From Octopus sinensis (taxonomy: Eukaryota), in contig NC_042999.1 of assembly GCF_006345805.1 (NCBI RefSeq), forward strand, positions 17,360,001-17,424,000: 64,000 nucleotides of DNA, given 5' to 3'. Below the pieces are notes generated by a model. It worked only from the letters and a program-made list of their open reading frames with translations, was not told where the DNA came from and did no database searches. Positions within the stretch are counted from its first letter, which is position 1. Each line of letters opens with the position of its first letter. The position numbers and the translations under genes were made by a program. This document shows positions 5,035-55,805 of the stretch, one piece after another.

Positions 5035-5207
5035 TAAGAAGTGCCCTCCTGTGTGGTACGTAGCTTGCTTACCAACCACATCGTTCCGGTTTCAGTCCCA
5101 CTGCGTGGCATCTTGGGCAAGTGTCTTCTACTATAGCCTCGGGCCTACCAAAGCCTTGTGAGTGGATTTGGTAGATGGAAACTGAAAGCCCGTCGTATAT
5201 ATGTATG

Positions 5208-5266
<59 letters not shown>

Positions 5267-5477
5267 CTGTTTGTCACCCCAACATCACTTGACAACCGAT
5301 GCTGGTGTGTTTACGCCCCCTTAATCTAGCGGATCGGCAAAAGGGTCCGATAGAATAAGTACTAGGCTTACAAAGAATAAGTCCTGGGGTCGATTTTCTT
5401 GACTAAAGGCGGTGCTCCAGCATGGCCGCAGTCAAATGACTGAAACAAGTAAAAGAGTAAAATAGTAAAAGAGTAAG
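5035..5477 (+). mobile_element. SINE family A, full length (tRNA-like head, internal microsatellite, tail ending GACTGAAACAAGTAAAAGAG)
   Basis: B-box-like GGTTTCAGTCCC; body CTTGGGCAAGTGTCTTCTACTATAGCCTCGGGCC; many homologous copies in this window. Confidence 0.85.
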
Positions 5478-6024: not shown

Positions 6025-6312
6025 TCAATGTGATCACGTGACCGACCAGACCATCAGATGTTGCTACACAGCGCTGGTCACAATGCGTTCGCATTGTTTT
6101 AGCCTTTGAATGACGCCACCCCGCTGGCTAAGCGAGCAGGCCAAGAGAAGAAAGAGTGGTGAAAGCAGGGATCACCACCCCCTGCCGGAGCCTCGTGGTG
6201 CTTTCAGGTGTTTTCGCTCAATAAACACATGCAACGCCCGGTCTGGGAATCGAAACCTCGATCCTACGACCGCGAGTTCGCTGCCCTAACCACTAGGCCA
6301 TTGCACCTCCAC
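6025..6312 (-). mobile_element. SINE family C, tail variant C2
   Basis: Head GGAGGTGCAATGGCCTAGTGGTTAGGGCAGCG...GGTTTCGATTCCC (A and B boxes) is shared with 9064 and 27996; the 3' part differs (GGCCTGCTCGCTTAGCCAGCGGGGTGGCGTCATT...). Confidence 0.8.
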
Positions 6313-6344
6313 ACACACAACACACACACACACACACACATATA

Positions 6345-7508
6345 TTTGCCAACCTAGTCATAGGATACCTAGAGATCAGTCTGTATCGTAAGGTTCTAGA
6401 AAGATATGGCAGCCCTTTCTCCATCTACATAGAAAACAACTGGAAGAGATATCTAGATGACTGTTTCATCCTTTGGCATAAAAATATAGAAAAACTCATA
6501 GAATTCCAGAAAATTTTAAACGGACTGGACGTAAACATCCAATTCACGATGGAATATAGCCAACAACAACTCCCCTTCCTCGATAACCTCATTAAGAAAG
6601 CTAATAATATAATAGAAACAGACATATACTATAAGCCTACAGACTCTAAGCAATATCTTCCATTCAATTCATGCCACCCCAGACACACCAGGATAAATAT
6701 CCCCTTCAATCTAGCAAAAAGGATATGCACTATAGTCTCTAACGCAAACACCAGAGACACACGACTACAAGAACTAAAAGATACCCTAATCACCAGGAAC
6801 TATCCACCTTCACTTATTGACAAGTGCATTCAACTTAACATCAAGGAACTGAGACATCCCAAATCAAAGAAAAACTTACAACCAAAAGCCTTACCATACA
6901 TCTCCACACACAACCCTCTCAATAACGAAGCCTTCGACACCATCCTCCATAACATACCCCTCCTAAAAAAAGACCACAGAATGAACACAATCCTCCAAAC
7001 ACACACGATCATAAAAAGCAAAAGACAGCCTAGATCCATGAAAAGTCTCCTTACACAAGCCCGAATTCACTCCTCAACACAGAAGCCGACAGTAAAAAAA
7101 TGTGGAAGACCCAATTGCGGGATATGCGACTATCTAATTGAGGGATCAGAGTTCTCCTTCCAGCAGGGACAACGGTTTACAGTGAAAAGCAACTTCACAT
7201 GTGCTTCGGAGAACCTAATATACTCACTAACCTGCTCCGGGTGTCAAGAGCAGTACATAGGCCAAACAAAAAATGGTTTGCGTAAACGAATGGCCCTGCA
7301 CAGATCCCAGATAAAAATTCCCCAAAACAGAAAAATAGCTTTTAGCCAACACATAGATACTTGCGCCAACAAAAAAACACCAAACTTCAGAATTTTCCCC
7401 CTCTACCAATTTAGGGACGATACAACCTCGAGACAACGAATAAGTAAAGAAAATCTCTTTATTACAAAATACAAGCCACTTCTAAACGGGTCTACGACAA
7501 AAAATTAA
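6345..7508 (+). CDS. Penelope-like element ORF, 5'-truncated: C-terminal half of RT (YLDD motif), thumb and GIY-YIG endonuclease
   Basis: ORF 6549..7508 extends in frame by 68 stop-free codons to 6345 (FANLVIGYLE...WKRYLDDCFILW...IQFTMEYSQQQLPFLD). It continues YYKPTDSKQYL.F.SCHP.H, KKCGRPNCGIC and LIYSLTCSGCQEQYIGQT...RISKENLFI.KYKP.LN. Confidence 0.93.
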   Translation, partial: FANLVIGYLEISLYRKVLERYGSPFSIYIENNWKRYLDDCFILWHKNIEKLIEFQKILNGLDVNIQFTMEYSQQQLPFLDNLIKKANNIIETDIYYKPTDSKQYLPFNSCHPRHTRINIPFNLAKRICTIVSNANTRDTRLQELKDTLITRNYPPSLIDKCIQLNIKELRHPKSKKNLQPKALPYISTHNPLNNEAFDTILHNIPLLKKDHRMNTILQTHTIIKSKRQPRSMKSLLTQARIHSSTQKPTVKKCGRPNCGICDYLIEGSEFSFQQGQRFTVKSNFTCASENLIYSLTCSGCQEQYIGQTKNGLRKRMALHRSQIKIPQNRKIAFSQHIDTCANKKTPNFRIFPLYQFRDDTTSRQRISKENLFITKYKPLLNGSTTKN

Positions 7509-9829: not shown

Positions 9830-10235
9830 TATATATTTTACTCTTTTACTTGTTTCAGTCATTTGACTTCGGCCATGCTGGAGCACCGCCTTTAATCGAG
9901 CAACTCGACCCCGAGACTTATTCTTTGTAAGCCCAGCACGTATCCTCTCGGTCTCTTTTTGCCGAACCGCTAAGTGACGAGGACATAAACACACCAGCAT
10001 CAGCTGTCAAGCAATGCTAGGGGGACAAACACAGACACACAAACATACACACACACATATATAAACATATATCCGACAGGCTTCTTTCAGTTTCCGTCTA
10101 CCAAATCCACTCACGAGGCATTGGTCGGCCCGAGGCTAAAGCAGAAGACACTTGCCCAAGATGCCACACAGTGGGACTGAACCAGGAACCATGTGGTTTG
10201 TAAGCAAGCTACTTACCACACAGCCACTCCTGCGG
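9830..10235 (-). mobile_element. SINE family A, full length
   Basis: Complete reverse-complement match to the head, body and tail of 5035-5477. Confidence 0.85.
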
Positions 10236-10274
10236 CTATATATATGCTTATGTTTAAAACAGTTTAAGTATACA

Positions 10275-14417: not shown

Positions 14418-14835
14418 TTTCTCTTTTACTCTCTTTTACTTGTTTCAGTCATTTTACTGCGGCCATGCTGAAGCACCGCCTTCTAGTCGAGTAAATCGAC
14501 CCCAAGATTTATTCTTTGTAAGCCTAGTACTTATTCTATCAGTCTCCTTTGATGAACCGCTAAGTTACGGGGACGTAAACAAACCAGCATCGGTTGTCAA
14601 GCAATGGTGGGGGGGGGGCAAACACAGACACACAAACATATACACACATACATATACACATGTACATATATATACATATATACGACGGGCTTTTTCCAGT
14701 TTCGGTCTACCAAATCGACTCACAAGGCTTTGGTCGGCCCGAGCCTATACTAGAAGACACTTGTCCAAGGTTCCACGCAGTAGGACTGAACCTGGGACCA
14801 TGTGGTTGGTAGGCAAGCTACTTCCCACACAGCCA
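14418..14835 (-). mobile_element. SINE family A, full length
   Basis: Full reverse-complement match. ORF 14395..15045 merely runs through it. Confidence 0.85.
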
Positions 14836-24398: not shown

Positions 24399-24815
24399 GC
24401 GGCGAGTTAGCGGAAACTTCAGCACGCCGGGCGAAATGCGTAGCGGTATTTCCTCTGCCGTTACGTTGTAAGTTCAAATTCCGCCGAGGTTGACTTTGCC
24501 ATTCATCCTTTCGGGGTCGATTAAATAAGTACCAGCCACGCACTGGGGTCGATGTAATCGACTTAATCCGTTTGTCTGTCCTTGTTTGTCCCCTCTAAGT
24601 TTAGCCGCTTGTGGGTAGTAAACAAATAGGTATTTCGACTGTCTTTAGTGTTCTGAGTTCAAATTCCGCCGAGGCAGACTTTGCCATTCATCCTTTCGGG
24701 GTCGATTGAATAAGTACCAGTTACGCACTGGGGTCGATGTAATCGACTTAATCCGTTTGTCTGTCCTTGTTTGTCCCCTCTAAGTTTAGCCCTTGTGGGT
24801 AGTAAAGAAATAGAT
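24399..24815 (+). mobile_element. SINE family B head-to-tail dimer inside a single TSD
   Basis: The second copy starts at GTATTTCG (no A box); CAAACAGAAGG at 24388-24398 and 24820-24830. Confidence 0.85.
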
Positions 24816-26111
24816 ATAGCAAACAGAAGGATCGACATATCAGATAGTGAGTCATTCGAGATACACTGTACCTGACAAATGTGGATTGTGTATGGTTGGA
24901 ATGCCATGCACATCCCATCATTGTTGAAAGATACGATTTATAGGAATATTGTATGTACTGAATAATCAAAACCTTTTCTTTTTCTTCTATTTCATGATGT
25001 AATGGAAACAATACGAGAAATGAAATGTTAGTGAAATGAAATATTTCCTTCGCATGATTCTCTCGATATATCACATATATTGTACGGCGCAGGAATGATG
25101 GAATTATCTTTCTTTATATATAGAAAATGTTGTACTAGACATTCGATCAATTCTGATCTGGATCTAAAGAAAAAAACATATGTGTATGATGTTATTTTAA
25201 TCTAACCCTATTTTCAGAATATATCTAACCACGTATGAGTATGCTTATATAAAAAAGAACCAATCCAGTTTGTTTTCGTATTATAGATAGCCATTTAACG
25301 AGGAGAGAAAACTATCGTTTTCGAGTCGTATATCTCATGCGACATATAATATTAGTTTCAGGGTAGGAATTCTAGATTAATCCAGCGATCGGAGATGATG
25401 TACTAGTTTCCATCCGTAAATGACAAGAGAAACAAATAATTCATATCAATACAATCACACTTCTCATGCATTTTCAGTGACATTACTGCACTATGGAAAA
25501 TGCATTGCTTAAACAAATTCGTGACTTCATGAGCAACGTGAATTGTATTGGGACAAAAATGCATTTTCAGAAGAAAACATCTTTTCCAAAACGCCAAGTA
25601 TTTAACCATTGTAAAATATCTTGTTGAATAGTGTTGATCTAATACCAAGTAACCCTCAGTGACGAAGAGATCGACATGAATACCTCAATCGTTGTCACAG
25701 TGAAAACAAAAATGGGTGGGGGGGGTGAATTTGCTTCACTTTGTTCAATTCCGTTTCAAAGTATATAGCAGCGCTCAAAAGAAATGAAGAATTTTTCTAT
25801 TCGAAATATACCTCGTGCATTCAATAAATACTATTGTATAGAAACATGATAATAAATTTTGCAAACTAGCGACGCACTGGCACAAAAATACTGTATATTC
25901 ATACATATATACATATACATATATAATAATAATAATAAATATTAGGGAATAAATCCAAATTTACAGGGAAAAAATCAGATTTAGGATTAAATCCAATTTT
26001 ATAGTAAAATATTATATAATATTAATTCGAGACAAAACCACTATTTTGCAAATCAAACAAGGAAATACTTAATCAATACATAAAAAATTTTAATATAAAG
26101 TAAATAAATCG

Positions 26112-26155
26112 CCACTACAATTGTTTCATGTCTTCAAATGACATTCGTCAGGTGG
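26112..26155 (-). ncRNA. Canonical minimal type I hammerhead
   Basis: Minus strand CCAC-CTGACGA-ATGTC atttgaa GACAT-GAA-ACAATTGT-A-GTGG: all core positions intact, GUA triplet. Confidence 0.8.
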
Positions 26156-26238
26156 ATTTCCGATCTTCTAATCAGTTTTAATTTATGAAGTCATAAATTA
26201 AAACTTCATAAATTAAAACTGATTAGAAGATCGGAAAT

Positions 26239-26282
26239 CCACCTGACGAATTTCATTTGAAGACATGAAACAATTGTAGTGT
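26239..26282 (+). ncRNA. Mirror copy of the hammerhead, one stem II mismatch
   Basis: CAC-CTGACGA-ATTTC atttgaa GACAT-GAA-ACAATTGT-A-GTG. Confidence 0.72.
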
Positions 26283-26367
26283 TTATTTACTTTATATTAA
26301 AATTTTTTATGTATTGATTAAGTCTTTCCTTGTTTGATTTGCAAAATAGTGGTTTTGTCTCGAATTA

Positions 26368-26434
<67 letters not shown>

Positions 26435-26490
26435 ATATGGCCTGCTCGCTTCAAAGGCTAAAACAACAACAAACAATATGTATATATATA

Positions 26491-35707: not shown

Positions 35708-35781
35708 CATGTATCTGTCAGCTCTTAAGTTTACCTGAAATTGTACTTGTTAATTTGCTCACACAGCCAAGGATTATTACG

Positions 35782-35866
<85 letters not shown>

Positions 35867-35952
35867 TATATATATATACGTAATAATCCTTGGCTGTGTG
35901 AGCAAATTAACAAGTACAATTTCAGGTAAACTTAAGAGCTGACAGATACATG
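35708..35952. repeat. Perfect palindrome with ~75-bp arms and a (TA)n core, fused to the start of the ribozyme array
   Basis: CATGTATCTGTCAGCTCTTAAG...GGATTATTACGTA-(TA)n-TACGTAATAATCC...CTTAAGAGCTGACAGATACATG. Confidence 0.92.
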
Positions 35953-36052
35953 GATGTAATATATGTAAACTCACCCATGTGCTTCGTTCATGTTGAGCAG
36001 TTAGCTGATCGGCTTAAGCAGGGCAGGGTCGTTGTTTTTTTATAATACATTC

Positions 36053-36100
36053 AGGCCTGCTGATGAGTACGTAAGTATGAAATCACTGTGATACAGGTCT
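36053..36100 (+). ncRNA. Type I hammerhead, unit 1 (intact); predicted cleavage after A36093
   Basis: AGGCCTG-CTGATGA-GTAC gtaa GTAT-GAA-ATCA ctg TGAT-A-CAGGTCT: 7-bp stem I, 4-bp stems II and III, AUA triplet. Confidence 0.88.
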
Positions 36101-36532
36101 ATATTTTTTAAATGTCTTACTTTGAAAAATTGCATTCGGTGGGATTAGTAATATTTTTGGTAGAAATGACTAATTGTCCCTCTTAGCGTTTGGCATGTAT
36201 GTATAATGCCTTCTGGCATGTATGTATAATGCCCTCTATATATAAATTAATATGTTCAATAAGAAATAATTATTTTCGAAATTTTTTCTCTTATGAGGTT
36301 TTTACGCTATCTACCTGACAATTTCTTGTTAAGTTTTCCTTATTAAGTAGTTGTCCTTAATTGCTAAATTTTTATTCCGAAAATACATTTCCTCTCCCGA
36401 GATGCAATTCGTAAAAGTTTGCCATTTATCCGGATGTAATATATGTAAACTCACCCATGTGCTTCGTTGATGTTGAGCAGTTAGCTGATCGGCTTAAGCG
36501 GGGCAGGGTCGTTGTTTATTTATAATACATTC

Positions 36533-36579
36533 AGGCCTGCTGATGAGTACGTAAGTATGAATCACTGTGATACAGGTCT
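36533..36579 (+). ncRNA. Hammerhead, unit 2 (one A missing from GAAA)
   Basis: ...GTATGAATCAC...; a real lesion or a homopolymer sequencing error. Confidence 0.65.
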
Positions 36580-37011
36580 ATATTTTTTTAAATGTCTTAC
36601 TTTGAAAAATTGCATTCGGTGGGATTAGTAATATTTTTGGTAGAAATGACTAATTGTCCCTCTTAGCGTTTGGCATGTATGTATAATGCCTTCTGGCATG
36701 TATGTATAATGCCCTCTATATATAAATTAATATGTTCAATAAGAAATAATTATTTTCGAAATTTTTTCTCTTATGAGGTTTTTACGCTATCTACCTGACA
36801 ATTTCTTGTTAAGTTTTCCTTATTAAGTAGTTGTCCTTAATTGCTAAATTTTTATTCCGAAAATACTTTTCCTCTCCCGAGATGCAATTCGTAAAAGTTT
36901 GCCATTTATCCGGATGTAATATATGTAAACTCACCATGTGCTTCGTTGATGTTGAGCAGTTAGCTGATCGGCTTAAGCGGGGCAGGGTCGTTGTTTATTT
37001 ATAATACATTC

Positions 37012-37058
37012 AGGCCTGCTGATGATACGTAAGTATGAAATCACTGTGATACAGGTCT
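37012..37058 (+). ncRNA. Hammerhead, unit 3 (G10.1 missing)
   Basis: CTGATGATACGTAAGTATGAAATC. Confidence 0.65.
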
Positions 37059-37512
37059 ATATTTTTTTAAATGTCTTACTTTGAAAAATTGCATTCGGTG
37101 GGATTAGTAATATTTTTGGTAGAAATGATTAATTGTCCCTCTTAGCGTTTGGCATGTATGTATAATGCCTTCTGGCATGTATGTATAATGCCTTCTGGCA
37201 TGTATGTATAATGCCCTCTATATATAAATTAATATGTTCAATAAGAAATAATTATTTTCGAAATTTTTTCTCTTATGAGGTTTTTACGCTATCTACCTGA
37301 CAATTTCTTGTTAAGTTTTCCTTATTAAGTAGTTGTCCTTAATTGCTAATTTTTATTCCGAAAATACTTTTCCTCTCCCGAGATGCAATTCGTAAAAGTT
37401 TGCCATTTATCCGGATGTAATATATGTAAACTCACCCATGTGCTTCGTTGATGTTGAGCAGTTAGCTGATCGGCTTAGCGGGGCAGGGTCGTTGTTTATT
37501 TATAATACATTC

Positions 37513-37559
37513 AGCCTGCTGATGAGTACGTAAGTATGAAATCACTGTGATACAGGTCT
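37513..37559 (+). ncRNA. Hammerhead, unit 4 (one G missing in distal stem I, core intact)
   Basis: AGCCTG-CTGATGA-GTAC...CAGGTCT. Confidence 0.8.
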
Positions 37560-37988
37560 ATATTTTTTTAAATGTCTTACTTTGAAAAATTGCATTCGGT
37601 GGGATTAGTAATATTTTTGTAGAAATGACTAATTGTCCCTCTTAGCGTTTGGCATGTATGTATATGCCTTCTGGCATGTATGTATAATGCCCTCTATATA
37701 TAAATTAATATGTTCAATAAGAAATAATTATTTTCGAAATTTTTTCTCTTATGAGGTTTTTACGCTATCTACCTGACAATTTCTTGTTAAGTTTTCCTTA
37801 TTAAGTAGTTGTCCTTATTGCTAAATTTTTATTCCGAAAATACTTTTCCTCTCCCGAGATGCAATTCGTAAAAGTTTGCCATTTATCCGGATGTAATATA
37901 TGTAAACTCACCCATTGCTTCGTTGATGTTGAGCAGTTAGCTGATCGGCTTAAGCGGGGCAGGGTCGTTGTTTATTTATAATACATTC

Positions 37989-38036
37989 AGGCCTGCTGAT
38001 GAGTACGTAAGTATGAAATCACTGTGATACAGGTCT
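37989..38036 (+). ncRNA. Hammerhead, unit 5 (intact)
   Basis: Identical to unit 1. Confidence 0.88.
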
Positions 38037-38485
38037 ATATTTTTTTAAATGTCTTACTTTGAAAAATTGCATTCGGTGGATTAGTAATATTTTTGGTAGA
38101 AATGACTAATTGTCCCTCTTAGCGTTTGGCATGTATGTATAATGCCTTCTGGCATGTATGTATATGCCTTCTGGCATGTATGTATAATGCCCTCTATATA
38201 TAAATTAATATGTTCAATAAGAAATATTATTTTCGAAATTTTTTCTCTTATGAGGTTTTTACGCTATCTACCTGACAATTTCTTGTTAAGTTTTCCTTAT
38301 TAAGTAGTTGTCCTTATTGCTAAATTTTTATTCCGAAAATACTTTTCCTCTCCCGAATGCAATTCGTAAAAGTTGCCATTTATCCGGATGTAATATATGT
38401 AAACTCACCCATGTGCTTCGTTGATGTTGAGCAGTTAGCTGATCGGCTTAAGCGGTCAGGGTCGTTGTTTATTTATAATACATTC

Positions 38486-38533
38486 AGGCCTGCTGATGAG
38501 TACGTAAGTATGAAATCACTGTGATACAGGTCT
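38486..38533 (+). ncRNA. Hammerhead, unit 6 (intact)
   Basis: Identical to unit 1. Confidence 0.88.
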
Positions 38534-38964
38534 ATATTTTTTTAAATGTCTTACTTTGAAAAATGCATTCGGTGGGATTAGTATATTTTTGGTAGAAATG
38601 ACTAATTGTCCCTCTTAGCGTTTGGCATGTATGTATAATGCCTTCTGGCATGTATGTATAATGCCCTCTATATATAAATTAATATGTTCAATAAGAAATA
38701 ATTATTTTCGAAATTTTTTCTCTTATGAGGTTTTTACGCTATCTACCTGACAATTTCTTGTTAAGTTTTCCTTATTAAGTAGTTGTCCTTAATTGCTAAA
38801 TTTTTATTCCGAAAATACTTTTCCTCTCCCGAGATGCAATTCGTAAAAGTTTGCCATTTATCCGGATGTAATATATGTAAACTCACCCATGTGCTCCGTT
38901 GATGTTGAGCAGTTAGCTGATCGGCTTAAGCGGGTCAGGGTCGTTGTTTATTTATAATACATTC

Positions 38965-39012
38965 AGGCCTGCTGATGAGTACGTAAGTATGAAATCACTG
39001 TGATACAGGTCT
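38965..39012 (+). ncRNA. Hammerhead, unit 7 (intact)
   Basis: Identical to unit 1. Confidence 0.88.
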
Positions 39013-39448
39013 ATATGATTTTAAATGTCTTACTTTGAAAAATTGCATTCGGTGGGATTAGTAATATTTTTGGTAGAAATGACTAATTGTCCCTCTTAGC
39101 GTTTGGCATGTATGTATAATGCCTTCTGGCATGTATGTATAATGCCCTCTATATATAAATTAATATGTTTAATAAGAAATAATTATATTCGAAATTTTTT
39201 CTCTTATGAGGTTTTTACGCTATCTACCTGACAATTTCTTGTTAAGTTTTCCTTATTAAGTAGTTGTCCTTAATTGCTAAATTTTTATTCCGAAAATACT
39301 TTTCCTCTCCCGAGATGCAATTCGTAAAAGTTTGCCATTTTCCGGATGTAATATATGTAAACTCACCCATGTGCTTCGTTGATGTTGAGCAGTTAGCTGA
39401 TCGGCTTAAGCGGGGCAGGGTCGGTCGTTGTTTATTTATAATACATTC

Positions 39449-39496
39449 AGGCCTGCTGATGAGTACGTAAGTATGAAATCACTGTGATACAGGTCT
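39449..39496 (+). ncRNA. Hammerhead, unit 8 (intact)
   Basis: Identical to unit 1. Confidence 0.88.
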
Positions 39497-39925
39497 ATAT
39501 TTTTTTAAATGTCTTACTTTGAAAAATTGCATTCGGTGGGATTAGTAATATTTTTGGTAGAAATGACTAATTGTCCCTCTTAGCGTTTGGCATGTATGTA
39601 TAATGCCTTCTGGCATGTATGTATAATGCCCTCTATATATAAATTAATATGTTCAATAAGAAATAATTATTTTCGAAATTTTTTCTCTTATGAGGTTTTT
39701 ACGCTATCTACCTGACAATTTCTTGTTAGTTTTCCTTATAAGTAGTTGTCCTTAATTGCTAAATTTTTATTCCGAAAATACTTTTCCTCTCCGAGATGCA
39801 ATTCGTAAAAGTTTGCCATTTATCCGGATGTAATATATGTAAACTCACCCATGTGCTTCGTTGATGTTGAGCAGTTAGCTGATCGGCTTAAGCGGGGCAG
39901 GGTCGTTGTTTATTTATAATACATC

Positions 39926-39973
39926 AGGCCTGCTGATGAGTACGTAAGTATGAAATCACTGTGATACAGGTCT
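39926..39973 (+). ncRNA. Hammerhead, unit 9 (intact)
   Basis: Identical to unit 1. Confidence 0.88.
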
Positions 39974-40405
39974 ATATTTTTTTAAATGTCTTACTTTGAA
40001 AAATTGCATTCGGTGGGATTAGTAATATTTTTGTAGAAATGACTAATTGTCCCTCTTAGCGTTTGGCATGTATGTATAATGCCTTCTGGCATGTATGTAT
40101 AATGCCCTCTATATATAAATTAATATGTTCAATAAGAAATAATTATTTTCGAAATTTTTTCTCTTATGAGGTTTTTACGCTATCTACCTGACAATTTCTT
40201 GTTAAGTTTTCCTTATTAAGTAGTTGTCCTTAATTGCTAAATTTTTATTCCGAAAATACATTTCCTCTCCCGAGATGCAATTCGTAAAAGTTTGCCATTT
40301 ATCCGGATGTAATATATGTAAACTCACCCATGTGCTTCGTTGATGTTGAGCAGTTAGCTGATCGGCTTAAGCGGGTCAGGGTCGTTGTTTATTTATAATA
40401 CATTC

Positions 40406-40453
40406 AGGCCTGCTGATGAGTACGTAAGTATGAAATCACTGTGATACAGGTCT
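40406..40453 (+). ncRNA. Hammerhead, unit 10 (intact)
   Basis: Identical to unit 1. Confidence 0.88.
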
Positions 40454-40887
40454 ATATTTTTTTTAAATGTCTTACTTTGAAAAATTGCATTCGGTGGGAT
40501 TAGTAATATTTTTGGTAGAAATGACTAATTGTCCCTCTTAGCGTTTGGCATGTATGTATAATGCCTTCTGGCATGTATGTATAATGCCCTCTATATATAA
40601 ATTAATATGTTCAATAAGAAATAATTATTTTCGAAATTTTTTCTCTTATGAGGTTTTTACGCTATCTACCTGACAATTTCTTGTTAAGTTTTCCTTATTA
40701 AGTAGTTGTCCTTAATTGCTAAATTTTTATTCCGAAAATACTTTTCCTCTCCCGAGATGCAATTCGTAAAAGTTTGCCATTTATCCGGATGTAATATATG
40801 TAAACTCACCCATGTGCTTCGTTGATGTTGAGCAGTTAGCTGATCGGCTTAAGCGGGGCAGGGTCGTTGTTTATTTATAATACATTC

Positions 40888-40935
40888 AGGCCTGCTGATG
40901 AGTACGTAAGTATGAAATCACTGTGATACAGGTCT
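40888..40935 (+). ncRNA. Hammerhead, unit 11 (intact)
   Basis: Identical to unit 1. Confidence 0.88.
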
Positions 40936-41201
40936 ATATTTTTTTAAATGTCTTACTTTGAAAAATTGCATTCGGTGGGATTAGTAATATTTTTGGTAGA
41001 AATGACTAATTGTCCCTCTTAGCGTTTGGCATGTATGTATAATGCCTTCTGGCATGTATGTATAATGCCCTCTATATATAAATTAATATGTTCAATAAGA
41101 AATAATTATTTTCGAAATTTTTTCTCTTATGAGGTTTTTACGCTATCTACCTGACAATTTCTTGTTAAGTTTTCCTTATTAAGTAGTTGTCCTTAATTGC
41201 T

Positions 41202-41206
<5 letters not shown>

Positions 41207-41275
<69 letters not shown>

Positions 41276-41280
41276 ATTAT

Positions 41281-41367
<87 letters not shown>

Positions 41368-41420
41368 TATAATATATATTATATATATATATATATATGT
41401 ATATATAACTTTATTATATA
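41207..41420. repeat. (TA)n tract at the right boundary of the array
   Basis: Directly visible. Confidence 0.95.
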
Positions 41421-41680
41421 TAGGCGTAGGAGTAGCTGTGTGGTAAGTAGATTGCTTACGAACAACATGGTTCCAGGTTCAGTCCCACTGCGTGGCACCT
41501 TAGGCAAGTGTCTTCTACTATAGCCTCGGGCCGACCAAAGCCACGTGATTTGGATTTGGTAGACAGAAACTGAAAGAAGCCCGTCATATATATGTTTTTG
41601 TGTCAGTGTATGTACCCCCACAACATCGCTTGACAACCGAAGCTGCTGCGTTTACGTACCCGTAACTTAGCAGTTTGGCA
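41421..41680 (+). mobile_element. SINE family A, 3'-truncated
   Basis: AGGCGTAGGAGTAGCTGTGTGGTAAG...GGTTCAGTCCCACTGCGTGGCACC... Confidence 0.8.
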
Positions 41681-48085: not shown

Positions 48086-48540
48086 TTAGAATATGTTTAG
48101 TTGTGGTCTGTATTTTTGAATAAGATTACTTTCCTTATTTATTCGTGTTTGGTCTGTGGTGTTGTCCGAGCATTGTATAGTGGGAAGACTAAGAATTTGG
48201 GGGACTTATTGTGTGCACAAAGGTCTAAGTGTCCACTTAGTGGTATCTGTCTTGTGGAGGGGTCCCTCAGTTGTTGTCGGTGAACTGTCATTCTGTCTCT
48301 GAGGGTAAGGCTCGTTTGCCCTATGTAGTCTTCGTGGCATCTTTCACACCTTATGACGTAGAGTAAATTTTTTGATGCGCACGTGAAATTATTTTTTATG
48401 ATGAATGTGTGTCCCGAGTGGAACTTGTACGACGATCCCTCAATGAGGTGGACGCAGGTCTTGCAGTTGGGGCGACCACATTTTTTGATGGTGGGCGGTG
48501 GGTTTGTGTGTGTAATTTTGCGTTGGTGAGGGGGGGTTTT
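48086..48540 (-). pseudogene. Penelope GIY-YIG endonuclease domain with one frameshift (absent from the ORF track)
   Basis: PTIKKCGRPNCKTCVHLIEGSSYKFHSGHTFIIKNNFTCASKNLLYVIRCERCHEDYIGQTSLTLRDRMTVHRQQLRDPSTRQIPLSGHLDLC...FPLY / CSDNTTDQTRINKESNLIQKYRPQLNIF*, colinear with the C-terminus of 6549..7508. Confidence 0.9.
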
Positions 48541-55334: not shown

Positions 55335-55544
55335 CTCTCTTTTACTCTTTTAATTGTTTCAGTCATTTGACTGTGCCCATGCTGGAGCACCGCCTTTGGT
55401 CGAAGAAATCGACCCCAGGACTTATTCTTTGTAAGCCTAGTACTTATTCTATCGTTCTCATTTGCCGAACCGTTAAGATACGGGGACGTTAACACACCCG
55501 CATCGGTTGTCAAGCGATGCTGGGGGACAAACACAGAGATACAA

Positions 55545-55583
<39 letters not shown>

Positions 55584-55608
55584 ATATATATTATATATAT
55601 AATATATA

Positions 55609-55656
<48 letters not shown>

Positions 55657-55805
55657 GACAGGCTCCTATCAGTTTCCGTCTACCAAATCCACTCACAAGG
55701 CTTTCGTCGGCCCGAGGTTATAGTAGAAGACACTCGCCCAAGGTGCCACGTAGTGGGAATGAACTCAGAACCATGCTACTTACCGCATAGCCACTCCTGC
55801 GCCTA
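55335..55805 (-). mobile_element. SINE family A, full length with an expanded internal (CA)(TA) tract
   Basis: Full match to family A. Confidence 0.85.

What the first reader, a model, noticed from the sequence alone, without database searches (positions are those of the whole stretch)
35952..41206. An 11-unit, ~480-bp tandem array in which every unit carries a type I hammerhead ribozyme: candidate retrozyme / circular-RNA replicon
SEEN: eleven near-identical non-coding units. Each holds AGGCCTG-CTGATGA-GTAC gtaa GTAT-GAA-ATCA ctg TGAT-A-CAGGTCT, which gives a 7-bp stem I, the invariant CUGAUGA and GAA core, 4-bp stems II and III and an AUA cleavage triplet. Eight copies are perfect (units 1 and 5-11); units 2-4 have single-base deletions. 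Unlike the other hammerheads in this window, stem III is a real hairpin, so the fold should be able to form as a monomer. ESTABLISHED: tandem repeats with one type I hammerhead per unit are the architecture of newt satellite 2, schistosome SM-alpha, cave-cricket pDo500 and animal non-LTR retrozymes. Their multimeric transcripts self-cleave to unit-length RNAs, some of which circularise, and they are thought to be copied by a borrowed RT, with PLEs as proposed helpers. INFERENCE: + strand transcription would release ~480-nt monomers (first one 36094-36572). The array may be one rolling-circle-like cDNA insertion, since it starts mid-unit, ends mid-unit and is bounded by TA-rich DNA like the PLE ends nearby. 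The unit is somewhat long for the class as I know it. I know of no description of this family in a cephalopod, but I could not search. Caveats: the stem II closing pair is G-U rather than G-C, and a T7 run 5 nt downstream would stop Pol III read-through.
Basis: partly seen in the sequence, partly recalled or inferred. Interest (0 to 1): 0.92.

Follow-up and report, generated by a model that had tools for sequence, protein, structure and literature searches.

The report
Hammerhead-ribozyme retrozyme array in an octopod
This is a young 11-unit tandem array of a 481-bp non-coding repeat in an octopus-like genome; each unit carries a self-cleaving hammerhead ribozyme motif, which makes it a new cephalopod example of the known animal "non-LTR retrozymes" that are thought to spread through small circular RNAs.

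Summary
Window 35952-41206 is a 10.9-copy tandem array with a 481-bp consensus unit and 33% GC. Each unit has one type I hammerhead (HHR) motif on the + strand. A strict HHR descriptor finds only the array copies and scored zero hits in 300 shuffles of the window.

The unit has no ORF over 54 aa. Its + strand RNA is predicted to be unusually self-paired (z about -5.5 to -7.3; 40 control segments average -0.7, minimum -3.2) and more so than the - strand. Units differ by 0.76% in substitutions, variants are almost all private, and adjacent units are no more alike than distant ones. This fits one amplification burst.

The right end abuts (TA)n. The left end abuts a perfect 73-bp inverted copy of the flank on the far side of another (TA)n. 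PLE remnants and PLE-type minimal hammerheads lie in the same window.

It meets the published operational criteria for a metazoan non-LTR retrozyme. It fails Rfam thresholds (19 bits against 52), has G10.1-U11.1, and has a marginal helix III that favours dimer-mode cleavage.

Cleavage, circular RNA and mobility are untested. Verdict: new member of a known kind.

The parts
35952..41206 (+). Tandem array: 142-nt 3' part of a monomer, ten full monomers (36094-40928) and a 278-nt 5' part. Consensus unit is 481 bp. The array starts at monomer coordinate 340 and ends at 278.
   Evidence: TRF; unit alignment; phases
36053..36100 (+). Hammerhead, unit 1, intact; predicted cleavage after A36093
36533..36579 (+). 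Hammerhead, unit 2; one A of GAA-A15.1 is missing, so it is predicted inactive if the deletion is real. Cleavage site would be after A36572.
37012..37058 (+). Hammerhead, unit 3; G10.1 is missing, so it is predicted inactive if the deletion is real. Cleavage site would be after A37051.
37513..37559 (+). Hammerhead, unit 4; one G of the helix I 5' strand is missing. The core is intact and helix I is 5 bp. Cleavage site after A37552.
37989..38036 (+). Hammerhead, unit 5, intact; cleavage after A38029
38486..38533 (+). Hammerhead, unit 6, intact; cleavage after A38526
38965..39012 (+). Hammerhead, unit 7, intact; cleavage after A39005
39449..39496 (+). Hammerhead, unit 8, intact; cleavage after A39489
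39926..39973 (+). Hammerhead, unit 9, intact; cleavage after A39966
40406..40453 (+). Hammerhead, unit 10, intact; cleavage after A40446
40888..40935 (+). Hammerhead, unit 11, intact; cleavage after A40928
38030..40928 (+). Six predicted unit-length RNAs bounded by intact ribozymes on both sides: 38030-38526, 38527-39005, 39006-39489, 39490-39966, 39967-40446 and 40447-40928 (477-497 nt)
   Evidence: fold of 39490-39966
36191..36237 (+). 23-bp internal sub-repeat TGGCATGTATGTATAATGCCYTC. Most units have two copies; units 3 and 5 have three, which explains the 501- and 497-bp units. The sub-repeat recurs in every unit.
   Evidence: TRF
35709..35781 (.). Unique left flank, the original arm of the palindrome
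   Evidence: blastn; the repeat finder
35782..35878 (.). (TA)n microsatellite at the centre of the palindrome; presumed left half of the target site
35879..35951 (.). Inverted copy of 35709-35781, 100% identical, ending exactly at the first base of the array; presumed fold-back copy made at the 5' junction
41206..41422 (.). (TA)n microsatellite directly abutting the right (3') end of the array; presumed priming side of the target

Best explanation
The array is a metazoan non-LTR retrozyme: a non-autonomous, non-coding retroelement whose genomic form is a head-to-tail multimer.

Proposed cycle:
1. The + strand is transcribed as a multimer. Pol III is unlikely, because each unit has five T runs of 5 or more.
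2. The type I hammerhead in each unit cleaves after the A of GAUA|C. This most likely happens in a double-hammerhead form, in which the near-palindromic helix III segments (AUCACUGUGAU) of two units pair.
3. [quoted passage not shown] Helix I holds the two ends together.
4. A host RNA ligase closes the RNA into a highly base-paired circle.
5. A Penelope-like element RT/GIY-YIG endonuclease uses the circle as a rolling-circle template at a nicked (TA)n microsatellite, laying down a multimeric cDNA.

This locus looks like one such event, about 11 turns long. It appears to have been primed at the right-hand (TA)n and closed at the left by a snap-back copy of the flank.

Shown here: the array, the motif, the non-coding nature, the strand-specific excess of predicted structure, the star-like near-identity of units, the flank anatomy, and PLE remnants nearby. 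Inferred from the literature on the class: transcription, cleavage, circularisation, the PLE as helper, and the order of events at the junctions.
For: Array and motif:
- Array.
- Full hammerhead core and three helices in 8 of 11 units, with 7 consecutive.
- Zero descriptor hits in 300 shuffles.
- The Rfam HH9 model aligns helices I-III, the core and the cleavage site correctly, although it scores only 19 bits.

Non-coding, structured RNA:
- No reading frame over 54 aa in a consensus trimer.
- GC is 33%.
- + strand monomer: -134.7 kcal/mol, z -7.3. Consensus circle: -127.7 kcal/mol, z -5.5, 65% paired, 20 G-U pairs. The - strand gives z -3.7 with 8 G-U pairs.
- Forty control strand-segments of the window: mean z -0.70, sd 0.94, minimum -3.2.
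- In the circle MFE, hammerhead helices I and II form a separate branch.

Age and origin of the array:
- 16 private against 2 shared substitution sites.
- Mean pairwise difference is 0.76%, the same for adjacent (0.758) and non-adjacent (0.761) units.
- The array ends are out of phase, at monomer coordinates 340 and 278.
- The right end abuts a 217-bp (TA)n tract; such tracts cover only 2.6-4.5% of the window.

PLE context:
- PLE RT/GIY-YIG remnants at 6297-7505 and 48142-48540.
- PLE-type hammerheads at 26.1-26.3 kb next to another (TA)n.

Literature:
- Features of the class and circular RNAs: PMC7229834.
- Operational criteria (TRF repeat, type I HHR, MFE below -5 kcal/mol, at least 2 consecutive complete units), all met here: bioRxiv 10.64898/2026.07.22.740005.
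- PLE bias for (TA)n and tandem/inverted insertion structures: PMC8557442.
Against: - No Rfam hammerhead model reaches its gathering score.
- The 10.1-11.1 pair is G-U, whereas G-C is described as highly conserved (PMC4209133).
- The archetypal loop 1/loop 2 nucleotides are not recognisable.
- In the nearest-neighbour model the canonical fold is only about 1% of the ensemble of the isolated 72-nt motif, because UGAU of the core competes for AUCA.
- Three units carry disabling or weakening one-base deletions, and the motif is no better conserved than the rest of the unit within the array.
- There is no second locus of the family in the window or in a 20.7-kb Octopus vulgaris locus, and no hit in three public collections, none of which holds cephalopod genomes. 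Mobility and conservation therefore could not be tested.
- No similarity to the PLE copies at hand.
- No expression data.
- Repeat homogeneity and the one-base deletions could partly be products of long-read assembly and polishing.
Confidence: 0.72

Rival explanations
1. Ordinary minisatellite that grew at the DNA level. A single hammerhead-bearing fragment, for example a solo PLE terminus, was duplicated and then expanded by unequal crossing-over or replication slippage. The ribozyme is a passenger with no present RNA-level role.
For: Only one locus is seen. The motif is not better conserved than the rest of the unit within the array, and three copies are damaged. The 23-bp sub-repeat copy number varies, so slippage does occur. 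Li et al. 2026 themselves propose local amplification from PLE termini followed by unequal crossover.
Against: Variants are star-like, with no blocks of shared variants and no adjacency effect, whereas stepwise unequal crossover usually leaves shared variants. The strand-specific excess of RNA structure (z -5.5 to -7.3 against -3.1 to -4.1 for the complement) is not expected of a DNA-level satellite. The unit has no similarity to the PLE copies available. Insertion-like borders lie at (TA)n.
Confidence: 0.15
2. Part of a Penelope-like element itself: a run of pseudo-LTRs of an autonomous PLE rather than an independent non-autonomous element.
For: PLEs form tandem and inverted structures, carry type I hammerheads in their pLTRs and favour (TA)n (PMC8557442, PMC4209133). 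Helix III here is near-palindromic, like PLE hammerheads. PLE remnants lie in the window.
Against: There is no RT/EN reading frame in or next to the array, and its nearest neighbours are a palindromic flank and a SINE. The unit has no similarity to the PLE fragments of the window or of L001. The PLE-type hammerhead of this genome, at 26112-26155, has a different architecture: a 4-bp helix I, a 5-bp helix II, and a loop-less palindromic helix III.
Confidence: 0.07
3. DNA copy of an autonomous viroid-like or delta-like circular RNA replicon that replicates RNA to RNA. The genomic array would be an incidental endogenisation.
For: Circular-RNA-like size, a high degree of predicted self-pairing, and a hammerhead.
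Against: There is no ribozyme of any Rfam class on the - strand. There is no ORF. GC is 33%, typical of animal retrozymes rather than viroid-like RNAs. The HHR pattern has no match in the viral or metagenome collections.
Confidence: 0.03

Closest known systems
Metazoan non-LTR retrozymes (Cervera & de la Pena, NAR 2020, PMC7229834; Li, Clavereau & Pollet, bioRxiv 2026), especially the Mytilus galloprovincialis family
   Same: Head-to-tail repeats of a few hundred bp, low GC, and one type I hammerhead per unit. There is no coding capacity, and the monomer RNA is predicted to be highly self-paired with the ribozyme left free. PLEs are present in the same genome. As in the mussel ribozymes, the archetypal loop 1/loop 2 nucleotides are not recognisable.
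   Different: The host is a cephalopod; none was found described in the searchable literature. The unit, 481 bp, is larger than the mussel's 350-390 bp. Helix III has 4 bp plus a 3-nt loop, against the usual 1-2 bp. Helix I has 7 bp rather than 6. The 10.1-11.1 pair is G-U. Expression and circularity are not shown here.
Dolichopoda cave-cricket pDo500 satellite and newt/axolotl satellite 2 hammerheads (PMC2837043; PMC7229834)
   Same: Satellite-like repeats of about 330-500 bp, each with a type I hammerhead. The hammerheads can act as double hammerheads through an extended helix III. The axolotl HHR_Amex2 also has a non-Watson-Crick pair (U-U) at the base of helix II and still cleaves, best as a dimer.
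   Different: In those families, conservation and compensatory changes across species, as well as in-vitro cleavage, have been demonstrated. Here there is only one young locus with no informative variation.
Minimal hammerheads of Penelope-like element pLTRs (Cervera & de la Pena 2014, PMC4209133)
   Same: Type I topology, a (near-)palindromic helix III suited to dimer formation, tandem arrangement, and association with (TA)n insertion sites. An example lies in the same window at 26112-26155.
   Different: The array unit has a real helix III hairpin, a 7-bp helix I and a GNRA-type loop 2. It has no adjacent RT/EN gene and no sequence similarity to the PLE copies at hand.

Membership tests
Hammerhead ribozyme, type I (Rfam clan CL00010: RF00163, RF02275) | Conserved core C3 U4 G5 A6 N7 G8 A9 ... 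G12 A13 A14, the A15.1-U16.1 pair, and H17 (not G) at the cleavage site | tested here: met
   CUGAUGA ... GAA, A15.1/U16.1 and A17 are present in units 1 and 4-11. Units 2 and 3 each lack one core-adjacent base.
Hammerhead ribozyme, type I (Rfam clan CL00010: RF00163, RF02275) | Three helices around the core, with helix I open and helices II and III closed by loops | tested here: met
   Helix I is 7 bp and open. Helix II is 4 bp with a GUAA loop. Helix III is 4 bp with a CUG loop. The HH9 model aligns all three.
Hammerhead ribozyme, type I (Rfam clan CL00010: RF00163, RF02275) | G10.1-C11.1 pair at the base of helix II, described as highly conserved (PMC4209133) | tested here: not met
   The sequence has G10.1-U11.1 in all units. 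Active natural variants with a U-U there are reported (axolotl HHR_Amex2, PMC7229834).
Hammerhead ribozyme, type I (Rfam clan CL00010: RF00163, RF02275) | Score at or above the Rfam gathering threshold | tested here: not met
   No hit at gathering, and none at E<=10 in 1.2 kb. In a 111-nt search HH9 scores 19 bits against 52, E 0.011. The accepted PLE-type hammerhead in the same window also fails, at 14.5 bits against 34, so the threshold is insensitive to these variants.
Hammerhead ribozyme, type I (Rfam clan CL00010: RF00163, RF02275) | Tertiary contact between loop 1 (in helix I) and loop 2 | not testable with these tools
   The geometry is compatible: a 7-bp helix I followed by a U-rich unpaired stretch, and a 4-bp helix II with a GNRA loop. 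The archetypal nucleotides are absent, as in the mussel retrozyme ribozymes (PMC7229834).
Hammerhead ribozyme, type I (Rfam clan CL00010: RF00163, RF02275) | Site-specific Mg2+-dependent self-cleavage | not testable with these tools
   Needs in-vitro transcription. The nearest-neighbour model gives the canonical fold -9.4 against an MFE of -12.4 kcal/mol, about 1% of the ensemble. The dimeric helix III is -12.1 kcal/mol.
Metazoan non-LTR retrozyme | Short tandem repeat: 150-450 bp in PMC7229834; consensus 51-972 bp in Li et al. 2026 | tested here: met
   481-bp consensus, 10.9 copies
Metazoan non-LTR retrozyme | Low GC (below 45%) | tested here: met
   33.2%
Metazoan non-LTR retrozyme | [quoted passage not shown] 2026) | tested here: met
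   Seven consecutive complete units, 5-11. The 48-nt motif has an MFE of -12.4 kcal/mol. My own descriptor was used in place of rnabob.
Metazoan non-LTR retrozyme | Non-coding, with no LTR, PBS or PPT features | tested here: met
   The longest stop-to-stop frame in a consensus trimer is 54 aa. No protein homologues were found. The array is a simple head-to-tail repeat.
Metazoan non-LTR retrozyme | Monomer RNA predicted to be highly self-paired, with the hammerhead free | tested here: met
   z is -5.5 to -7.3, against window controls with mean -0.7 and minimum -3.2. 65% of bases are paired. Helices I and II form a separate branch.
Metazoan non-LTR retrozyme | Co-occurrence with autonomous Penelope-like elements in the genome | tested here: met
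   RT/GIY-YIG remnants at 6297-7505 and 48142-48540. PLE-type hammerheads at 26.1-26.3 kb. Whether any PLE copy is intact was not established.
Metazoan non-LTR retrozyme | Multiple dispersed loci (evidence of mobility) | tested here: inconclusive
   No other copy in the 64-kb window or in L001. No cephalopod genome is searchable by DNA with these tools (searches returned nothing).
Metazoan non-LTR retrozyme | Expression as unit-length linear and circular RNA | not testable with these tools
   No transcriptome access
Metazoan non-LTR retrozyme | Sequence relationship to a PLE pLTR (Li et al. 2026, shown for Xenopus) | tested here: not met
   blastn of the unit against the rest of the window and against an O. 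vulgaris PLE locus finds nothing. Only a handful of PLE fragments were available, so this is weak negative evidence.
Autonomous viroid-like / delta-like circular RNA | Ribozymes in both polarities, or a coding frame | tested here: not met
   No - strand ribozyme and no ORF

The most novel reading that the evidence does not exclude
The locus may be an almost undecayed footprint of a single rolling-circle reverse transcription of a circular retrozyme RNA by PLE machinery. On this reading it was primed at a nicked (TA)n microsatellite at the right junction, ran about 11 turns, and was sealed at the other end after the broken (TA)n end snapped back on itself and copied 73 bp of flank. That would give direct junction-level evidence for a mechanism that has so far only been proposed. 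It would also imply a currently active retrozyme/PLE pair, and an abundant ribozyme-made circular RNA of about 480 nt, in an octopus.
Probability: 0.3. Interest if true: 0.6.

Novelty: new member of a known kind. Interest (0 to 1): 0.42.

Why it matters
Hammerhead-bearing tandem repeats are the only known ribozyme-driven route to circular RNA in animals. They can make up a sizeable share of total RNA in some tissues (up to about 1% is reported in mussel).

A cephalopod family would extend the class to a lineage that is studied for its unusual RNA biology. It would also offer a ribozyme variant (G10.1-U11.1, a long near-palindromic helix III) for testing how monomer and dimer cleavage are balanced.

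The very young, cleanly bounded array is also a useful specimen for working out how these elements integrate, because the junctions have not yet decayed.

If the family turns out to be single-copy and silent, this is just one more satellite with a ribozyme relic.

Tried and rejected
- **Rfam.** No hammerhead appeared at gathering or at E<=10 on the window or on 1.2 kb. Only a 111-nt search brought up HH9, at 19 bits. I do not take this as refutation, because a PLE-type hammerhead in the same window also fails.
- **Public DNA collections.** I scanned the metagenome, viral and prokaryote-genome collections for the family-specific hammerhead pattern and found 0 hits in each. These collections are not expected to hold cephalopod DNA.
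- **Reaching eukaryotic assemblies through short ORFs.** I concatenated the five consensus ORFs of the unit and searched the protein collection. No hits.
- **Octopus vulgaris locus.** I fetched a locus through a PLE protein (L001). It shares SINE-like repeats with the window at 84-92% identity, so the host is an octopod, but it holds no copy of the unit.
- **Conservation within the array.** I looked for stronger conservation or covariation of the motif. The units are too similar to be informative, and the motif carries as many one-base deletions per column as the rest of the unit.
- **Other copies in the window.** None of the unit or of the 73-bp flank arm.
- **Poly(A) signals.** None on the + strand, but only about 0.7 would be expected by my own composition-based estimate, so this says nothing.
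- **Literature.** Searches for hammerhead, retrozyme or satellite DNA in cephalopods found no description. Only open-access text was searched.
- **Rejected readings.** A coding gene, a Pol III unit (five T runs of 5 or more per unit), and a both-polarity RNA replicon.

Full report
**1. The observation**

Tandem Repeats Finder reports an array at 35952-41206 with period 481, 10.9 copies and 96% matches. The 41-nt core of the proposed ribozyme occurs nine times exactly on the + strand, where none is expected by chance.

Reading all eleven copies gives the following:
- Units 1 and 5-11 have the full 48-nt motif AGGCCUG-CUGAUGA-GUAC-GUAA-GUAU-GAA-AUCA-CUG-UGAU-A|CAGGUCU.
- Unit 2 has lost one A of GAA-A.
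- Unit 3 has lost G10.1.
- Unit 4 has lost one G of the 5' strand of helix I.

The topology is type I: helix I is open, and helices II and III are closed by loops.

I wrote a strict descriptor requiring the core, A15.1/U16.1, H17, helix I of at least 5 bp, and helices II and III of at least 3 bp each. It finds nine hits in the window, all in the array, and none in 300 dinucleotide-preserving shuffles of the whole window on both strands. The motif is therefore real and not a chance match, even when the array is counted as a single independent instance.

**2. What Rfam says**

- No family reaches its gathering score anywhere in the window.
- No hammerhead appears at E<=10 in a 1.2-kb search.
- Only a 111-nt search brings up Hammerhead_HH9, at 19 bits against a threshold of 52 (E 0.011). 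That alignment places helices I-III, the core and the cleavage site as expected.

As a calibration I ran the same search on the PLE-type minimal hammerhead at 26108-26157. It scores 14.5 bits on Hammerhead_1 against a threshold of 34. So Rfam thresholds are insensitive to the hammerhead variants of this genome. The published retrozyme surveys use descriptors rather than covariance models (PMC7229834; bioRxiv 10.64898/2026.07.22.740005).

**3. The unit**

The consensus is 481 bp and the array is 33% GC. The longest stop-to-stop frame in a consensus trimer is 54 aa, and a search with the concatenated short frames found no protein. The unit is therefore non-coding.

The + strand RNA is predicted to be unusually structured.
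- A natural monomer (39490-39966) folds at -134.7 kcal/mol, against -97.7 +/- 5.1 for shuffles: z = -7.3.
- The consensus folded as a circle gives -127.7 kcal/mol, z = -5.5, with 65% of bases paired and 20 G-U pairs.
- The complement is weaker: z between -3.1 and -4.1, with 8 G-U pairs.
- Forty control strand-segments of the same length from the window have mean z -0.70, sd 0.94 and minimum -3.2.

In the circular MFE structure, helix I and helix II of the hammerhead form a separate branch, and the rest of the molecule forms two long imperfect hairpin domains. This matches the description of metazoan retrozyme circles as highly self-paired with the ribozyme left free (PMC7229834). The strand asymmetry argues for constraint at the RNA level rather than for DNA palindromes alone.

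**4. The ribozyme in detail**

Against the canonical metazoan type I architecture (helix I 6 bp, helix II 4 bp, helix III 1-2 bp with a small palindromic loop, G10.1-C11.1 highly conserved; PMC4209133), this motif has:
- helix I of 7 bp, including one G-U;
- helix II of 4 bp with a GNRA-type GUAA loop;
- helix III of 4 bp with a 3-nt loop;
- G10.1-U11.1.

The archetypal loop 1/loop 2 nucleotides are not recognisable. This is also reported for the mussel retrozyme ribozymes, which nevertheless cleave (PMC7229834). A non-Watson-Crick pair at the base of helix II is tolerated in the axolotl HHR_Amex2, which works best as a dimer (PMC7229834).

The nearest-neighbour model does not favour that. The canonical structure is -9.4 kcal/mol against an MFE of -12.4, because UGAU of the core competes with UGAU of helix III for AUCA. 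In a 72-nt context the canonical fold takes about 1% of the ensemble.

The segment AUCACUGUGAU is nearly palindromic. Two copies pair over 10 bp around a single U-U mismatch, at -12.1 kcal/mol. I therefore predict that cleavage is most efficient in the double-hammerhead form on multimeric transcripts, as for newt, axolotl and PLE hammerheads. These energy models ignore tertiary contacts and Mg2+, so this is a prediction and not a result.

**5. History of the array**

The eleven units are almost identical.
- There are 16 private substitution sites against 2 shared ones.
- Mean pairwise substitution difference is 0.76%.
- The difference is the same for adjacent (0.758%) and non-adjacent (0.761%) units.
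- Units 2, 4, 5 and 11 carry no substitution at all.

This star-like pattern, with no blocks of shared variants, fits one burst that created all units at once. Stepwise unequal crossing-over would usually leave shared variants.

One-base deletions are the commonest difference: 21 private sites and 2 shared. They are concentrated in the interior units, with per-unit counts of 1, 1, 3, 5, 6, 3, 1, 3, 2, 0, 0, and they occur even in units with no substitution. That is the signature of indel-type long-read assembly error in the poorly anchored middle of a repeat. The ribozyme 'defects' of units 2-4 may therefore not exist in the animal. Equally, polishing could have made the units look more alike than they are. 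Raw reads would settle both questions.

As assembled, six monomers are bounded by intact ribozymes on both sides (38030-38526 through 40447-40928). A seventh (37553-38029) follows if unit 4, with its 5-bp helix I, is active.

**6. Borders**

The array begins at monomer coordinate 340 and ends at 278, so it is out of phase at both ends.

The right end runs directly into a 217-bp (TA)n tract. Next comes a tRNA-SINE-like repeat that is 89% identical to one in Octopus vulgaris.

The left end is not TA-rich. It abuts a 73-bp sequence (35879-35951) that is a 100% identical inverted copy of the unique flank 35709-35781. The two are separated by a 97-bp (TA)n. The order is therefore: flank, (TA)n, inverted flank, array, (TA)n.

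(TA)n tracts cover only 2.6-4.5% of the window, so an insertion into one is unlikely by chance alone. PLEs are reported to favour microsatellites, (TA)n in particular for some clades, and to leave complex tandem/inverted structures and short extra 'tails' at one end (PMC8557442).

My reading is as follows, and it is inferred. The target was a single (TA)n tract. cDNA synthesis was primed at its right half and went round a circular template about eleven times. The self-complementary left (TA)n end folded back and copied 73 bp of its own flank before being joined to the end of the cDNA, with at most 1 nt of microhomology. An assembly artefact at the palindrome cannot be excluded.

**7. Context**

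The window holds PLE remnants:
- an RT C-terminus plus GIY-YIG frame at 6297-7505 (+);
- a CX4CX2C plus GIY-YIG frame at 48142-48540 (-).

For the first of these, the best named relatives are from Argonauta hians (53% identity) and Octopus vulgaris (67% over 55% of the query). Bivalve hits follow.

A head-to-head inverted repeat at 26019-26371 carries a PLE-type minimal hammerhead on each arm and abuts another (TA)n. Dispersed repeats of the window match an O. vulgaris chromosome at 84-92% identity. The host is therefore an octopod or a close relative.

The unit has no detectable similarity to these PLE pieces or to anything else in the window.

**8. Comparison with the known class**

The closest known class is the metazoan non-LTR retrozyme (PMC7229834). 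The older hammerhead satellites also belong to it: newt satellite 2, Schistosoma Sm-alpha and cricket pDo500.

The array meets all the sequence-level criteria:
- repeat size within the class;
- GC below 45%;
- one type I hammerhead per unit;
- at least two consecutive complete units, with hammerhead MFE below -5 kcal/mol (Li et al. 2026);
- no coding capacity;
- a self-paired monomer;
- PLEs in the same genome.

It does not meet the Rfam threshold or the G10.1-C11.1 rule. The functional criteria (cleavage, circular RNA, many loci) could not be tested. At 481 bp the unit is not out of range: pDo500 is about 500 bp (PMC2837043), and vertebrate families span 51-972 bp.

I found no description of such elements in cephalopods in the searchable literature. 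That library lacks most subscription papers.

**9. Verdict**

This is a new member of a known kind.

Interest is moderate, for three reasons:
- the class has been established since 2020;
- the host lineage and the ribozyme variant are new;
- the locus is a clean specimen for the proposed rolling-circle, PLE-assisted insertion mechanism.

The main uncertainties are whether the ribozyme cleaves with G-U at 10.1-11.1 and a weak helix III, whether the family is expressed and mobile, and how much of the fine detail is assembly error.

Noticed in passing
window 26019-26371: Head-to-head inverted repeat. Each arm carries a PLE-type minimal hammerhead (CUGACGA...GAAACAAUUGUA). The - strand copy at 26112-26155 is intact; the + strand copy at about 26233-26278 has a helix II mismatch. 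The structure abuts (TA)n at 26368-26438. It looks like two 5'-truncated PLE ends inserted in inverted orientation. Rfam Hammerhead_1 gives only 14.5 bits against a threshold of 34.
   Followed up: partly
window 6297-7505 (+) and 48142-48540 (-): Remnants of Penelope-like element genes: an RT C-terminus plus GIY-YIG endonuclease, and a CX4CX2C zinc-finger-like motif plus GIY-YIG. The closest named relatives of the first are from Argonauta hians and Octopus vulgaris, followed by bivalves.
   Followed up: partly
window 35708-35952: A 245-bp near-perfect palindrome made of a unique flank, (TA)n, and a 100% identical inverted copy of the flank. It ends exactly at the first base of the array. It is either a fold-back repair product of the insertion or an assembly artefact.
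   Followed up: partly
window 36432-39825 (units 2-8): One-base deletions are concentrated in the interior units of the array (per-unit counts 1, 1, 3, 5, 6, 3, 1, 3, 2, 0, 0). They occur in units that have no substitutions at all. The pattern suggests uncorrected long-read indel errors rather than mutations.
   Followed up: partly
window 41416-41593; also 5050-5465, 9839-10238, 14421-14682, 55337-55775: Copies of SINE-like dispersed repeats, 84-92% identical to sequences in an Octopus vulgaris chromosome (OX597819.1). This points to an octopod origin of the window.
   Followed up: partly
window 24471-24817: A 185-bp unit repeated 1.9 times at 95% identity. It is probably a tandem pair of another short interspersed element.
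   Followed up: no
whole window: Microsatellites are very dense, with about 100 TRF rows, especially (TA)n, (CA)n and (TATC)n. They draw many spurious sub-threshold miRNA-family hits from Rfam.
   Followed up: no
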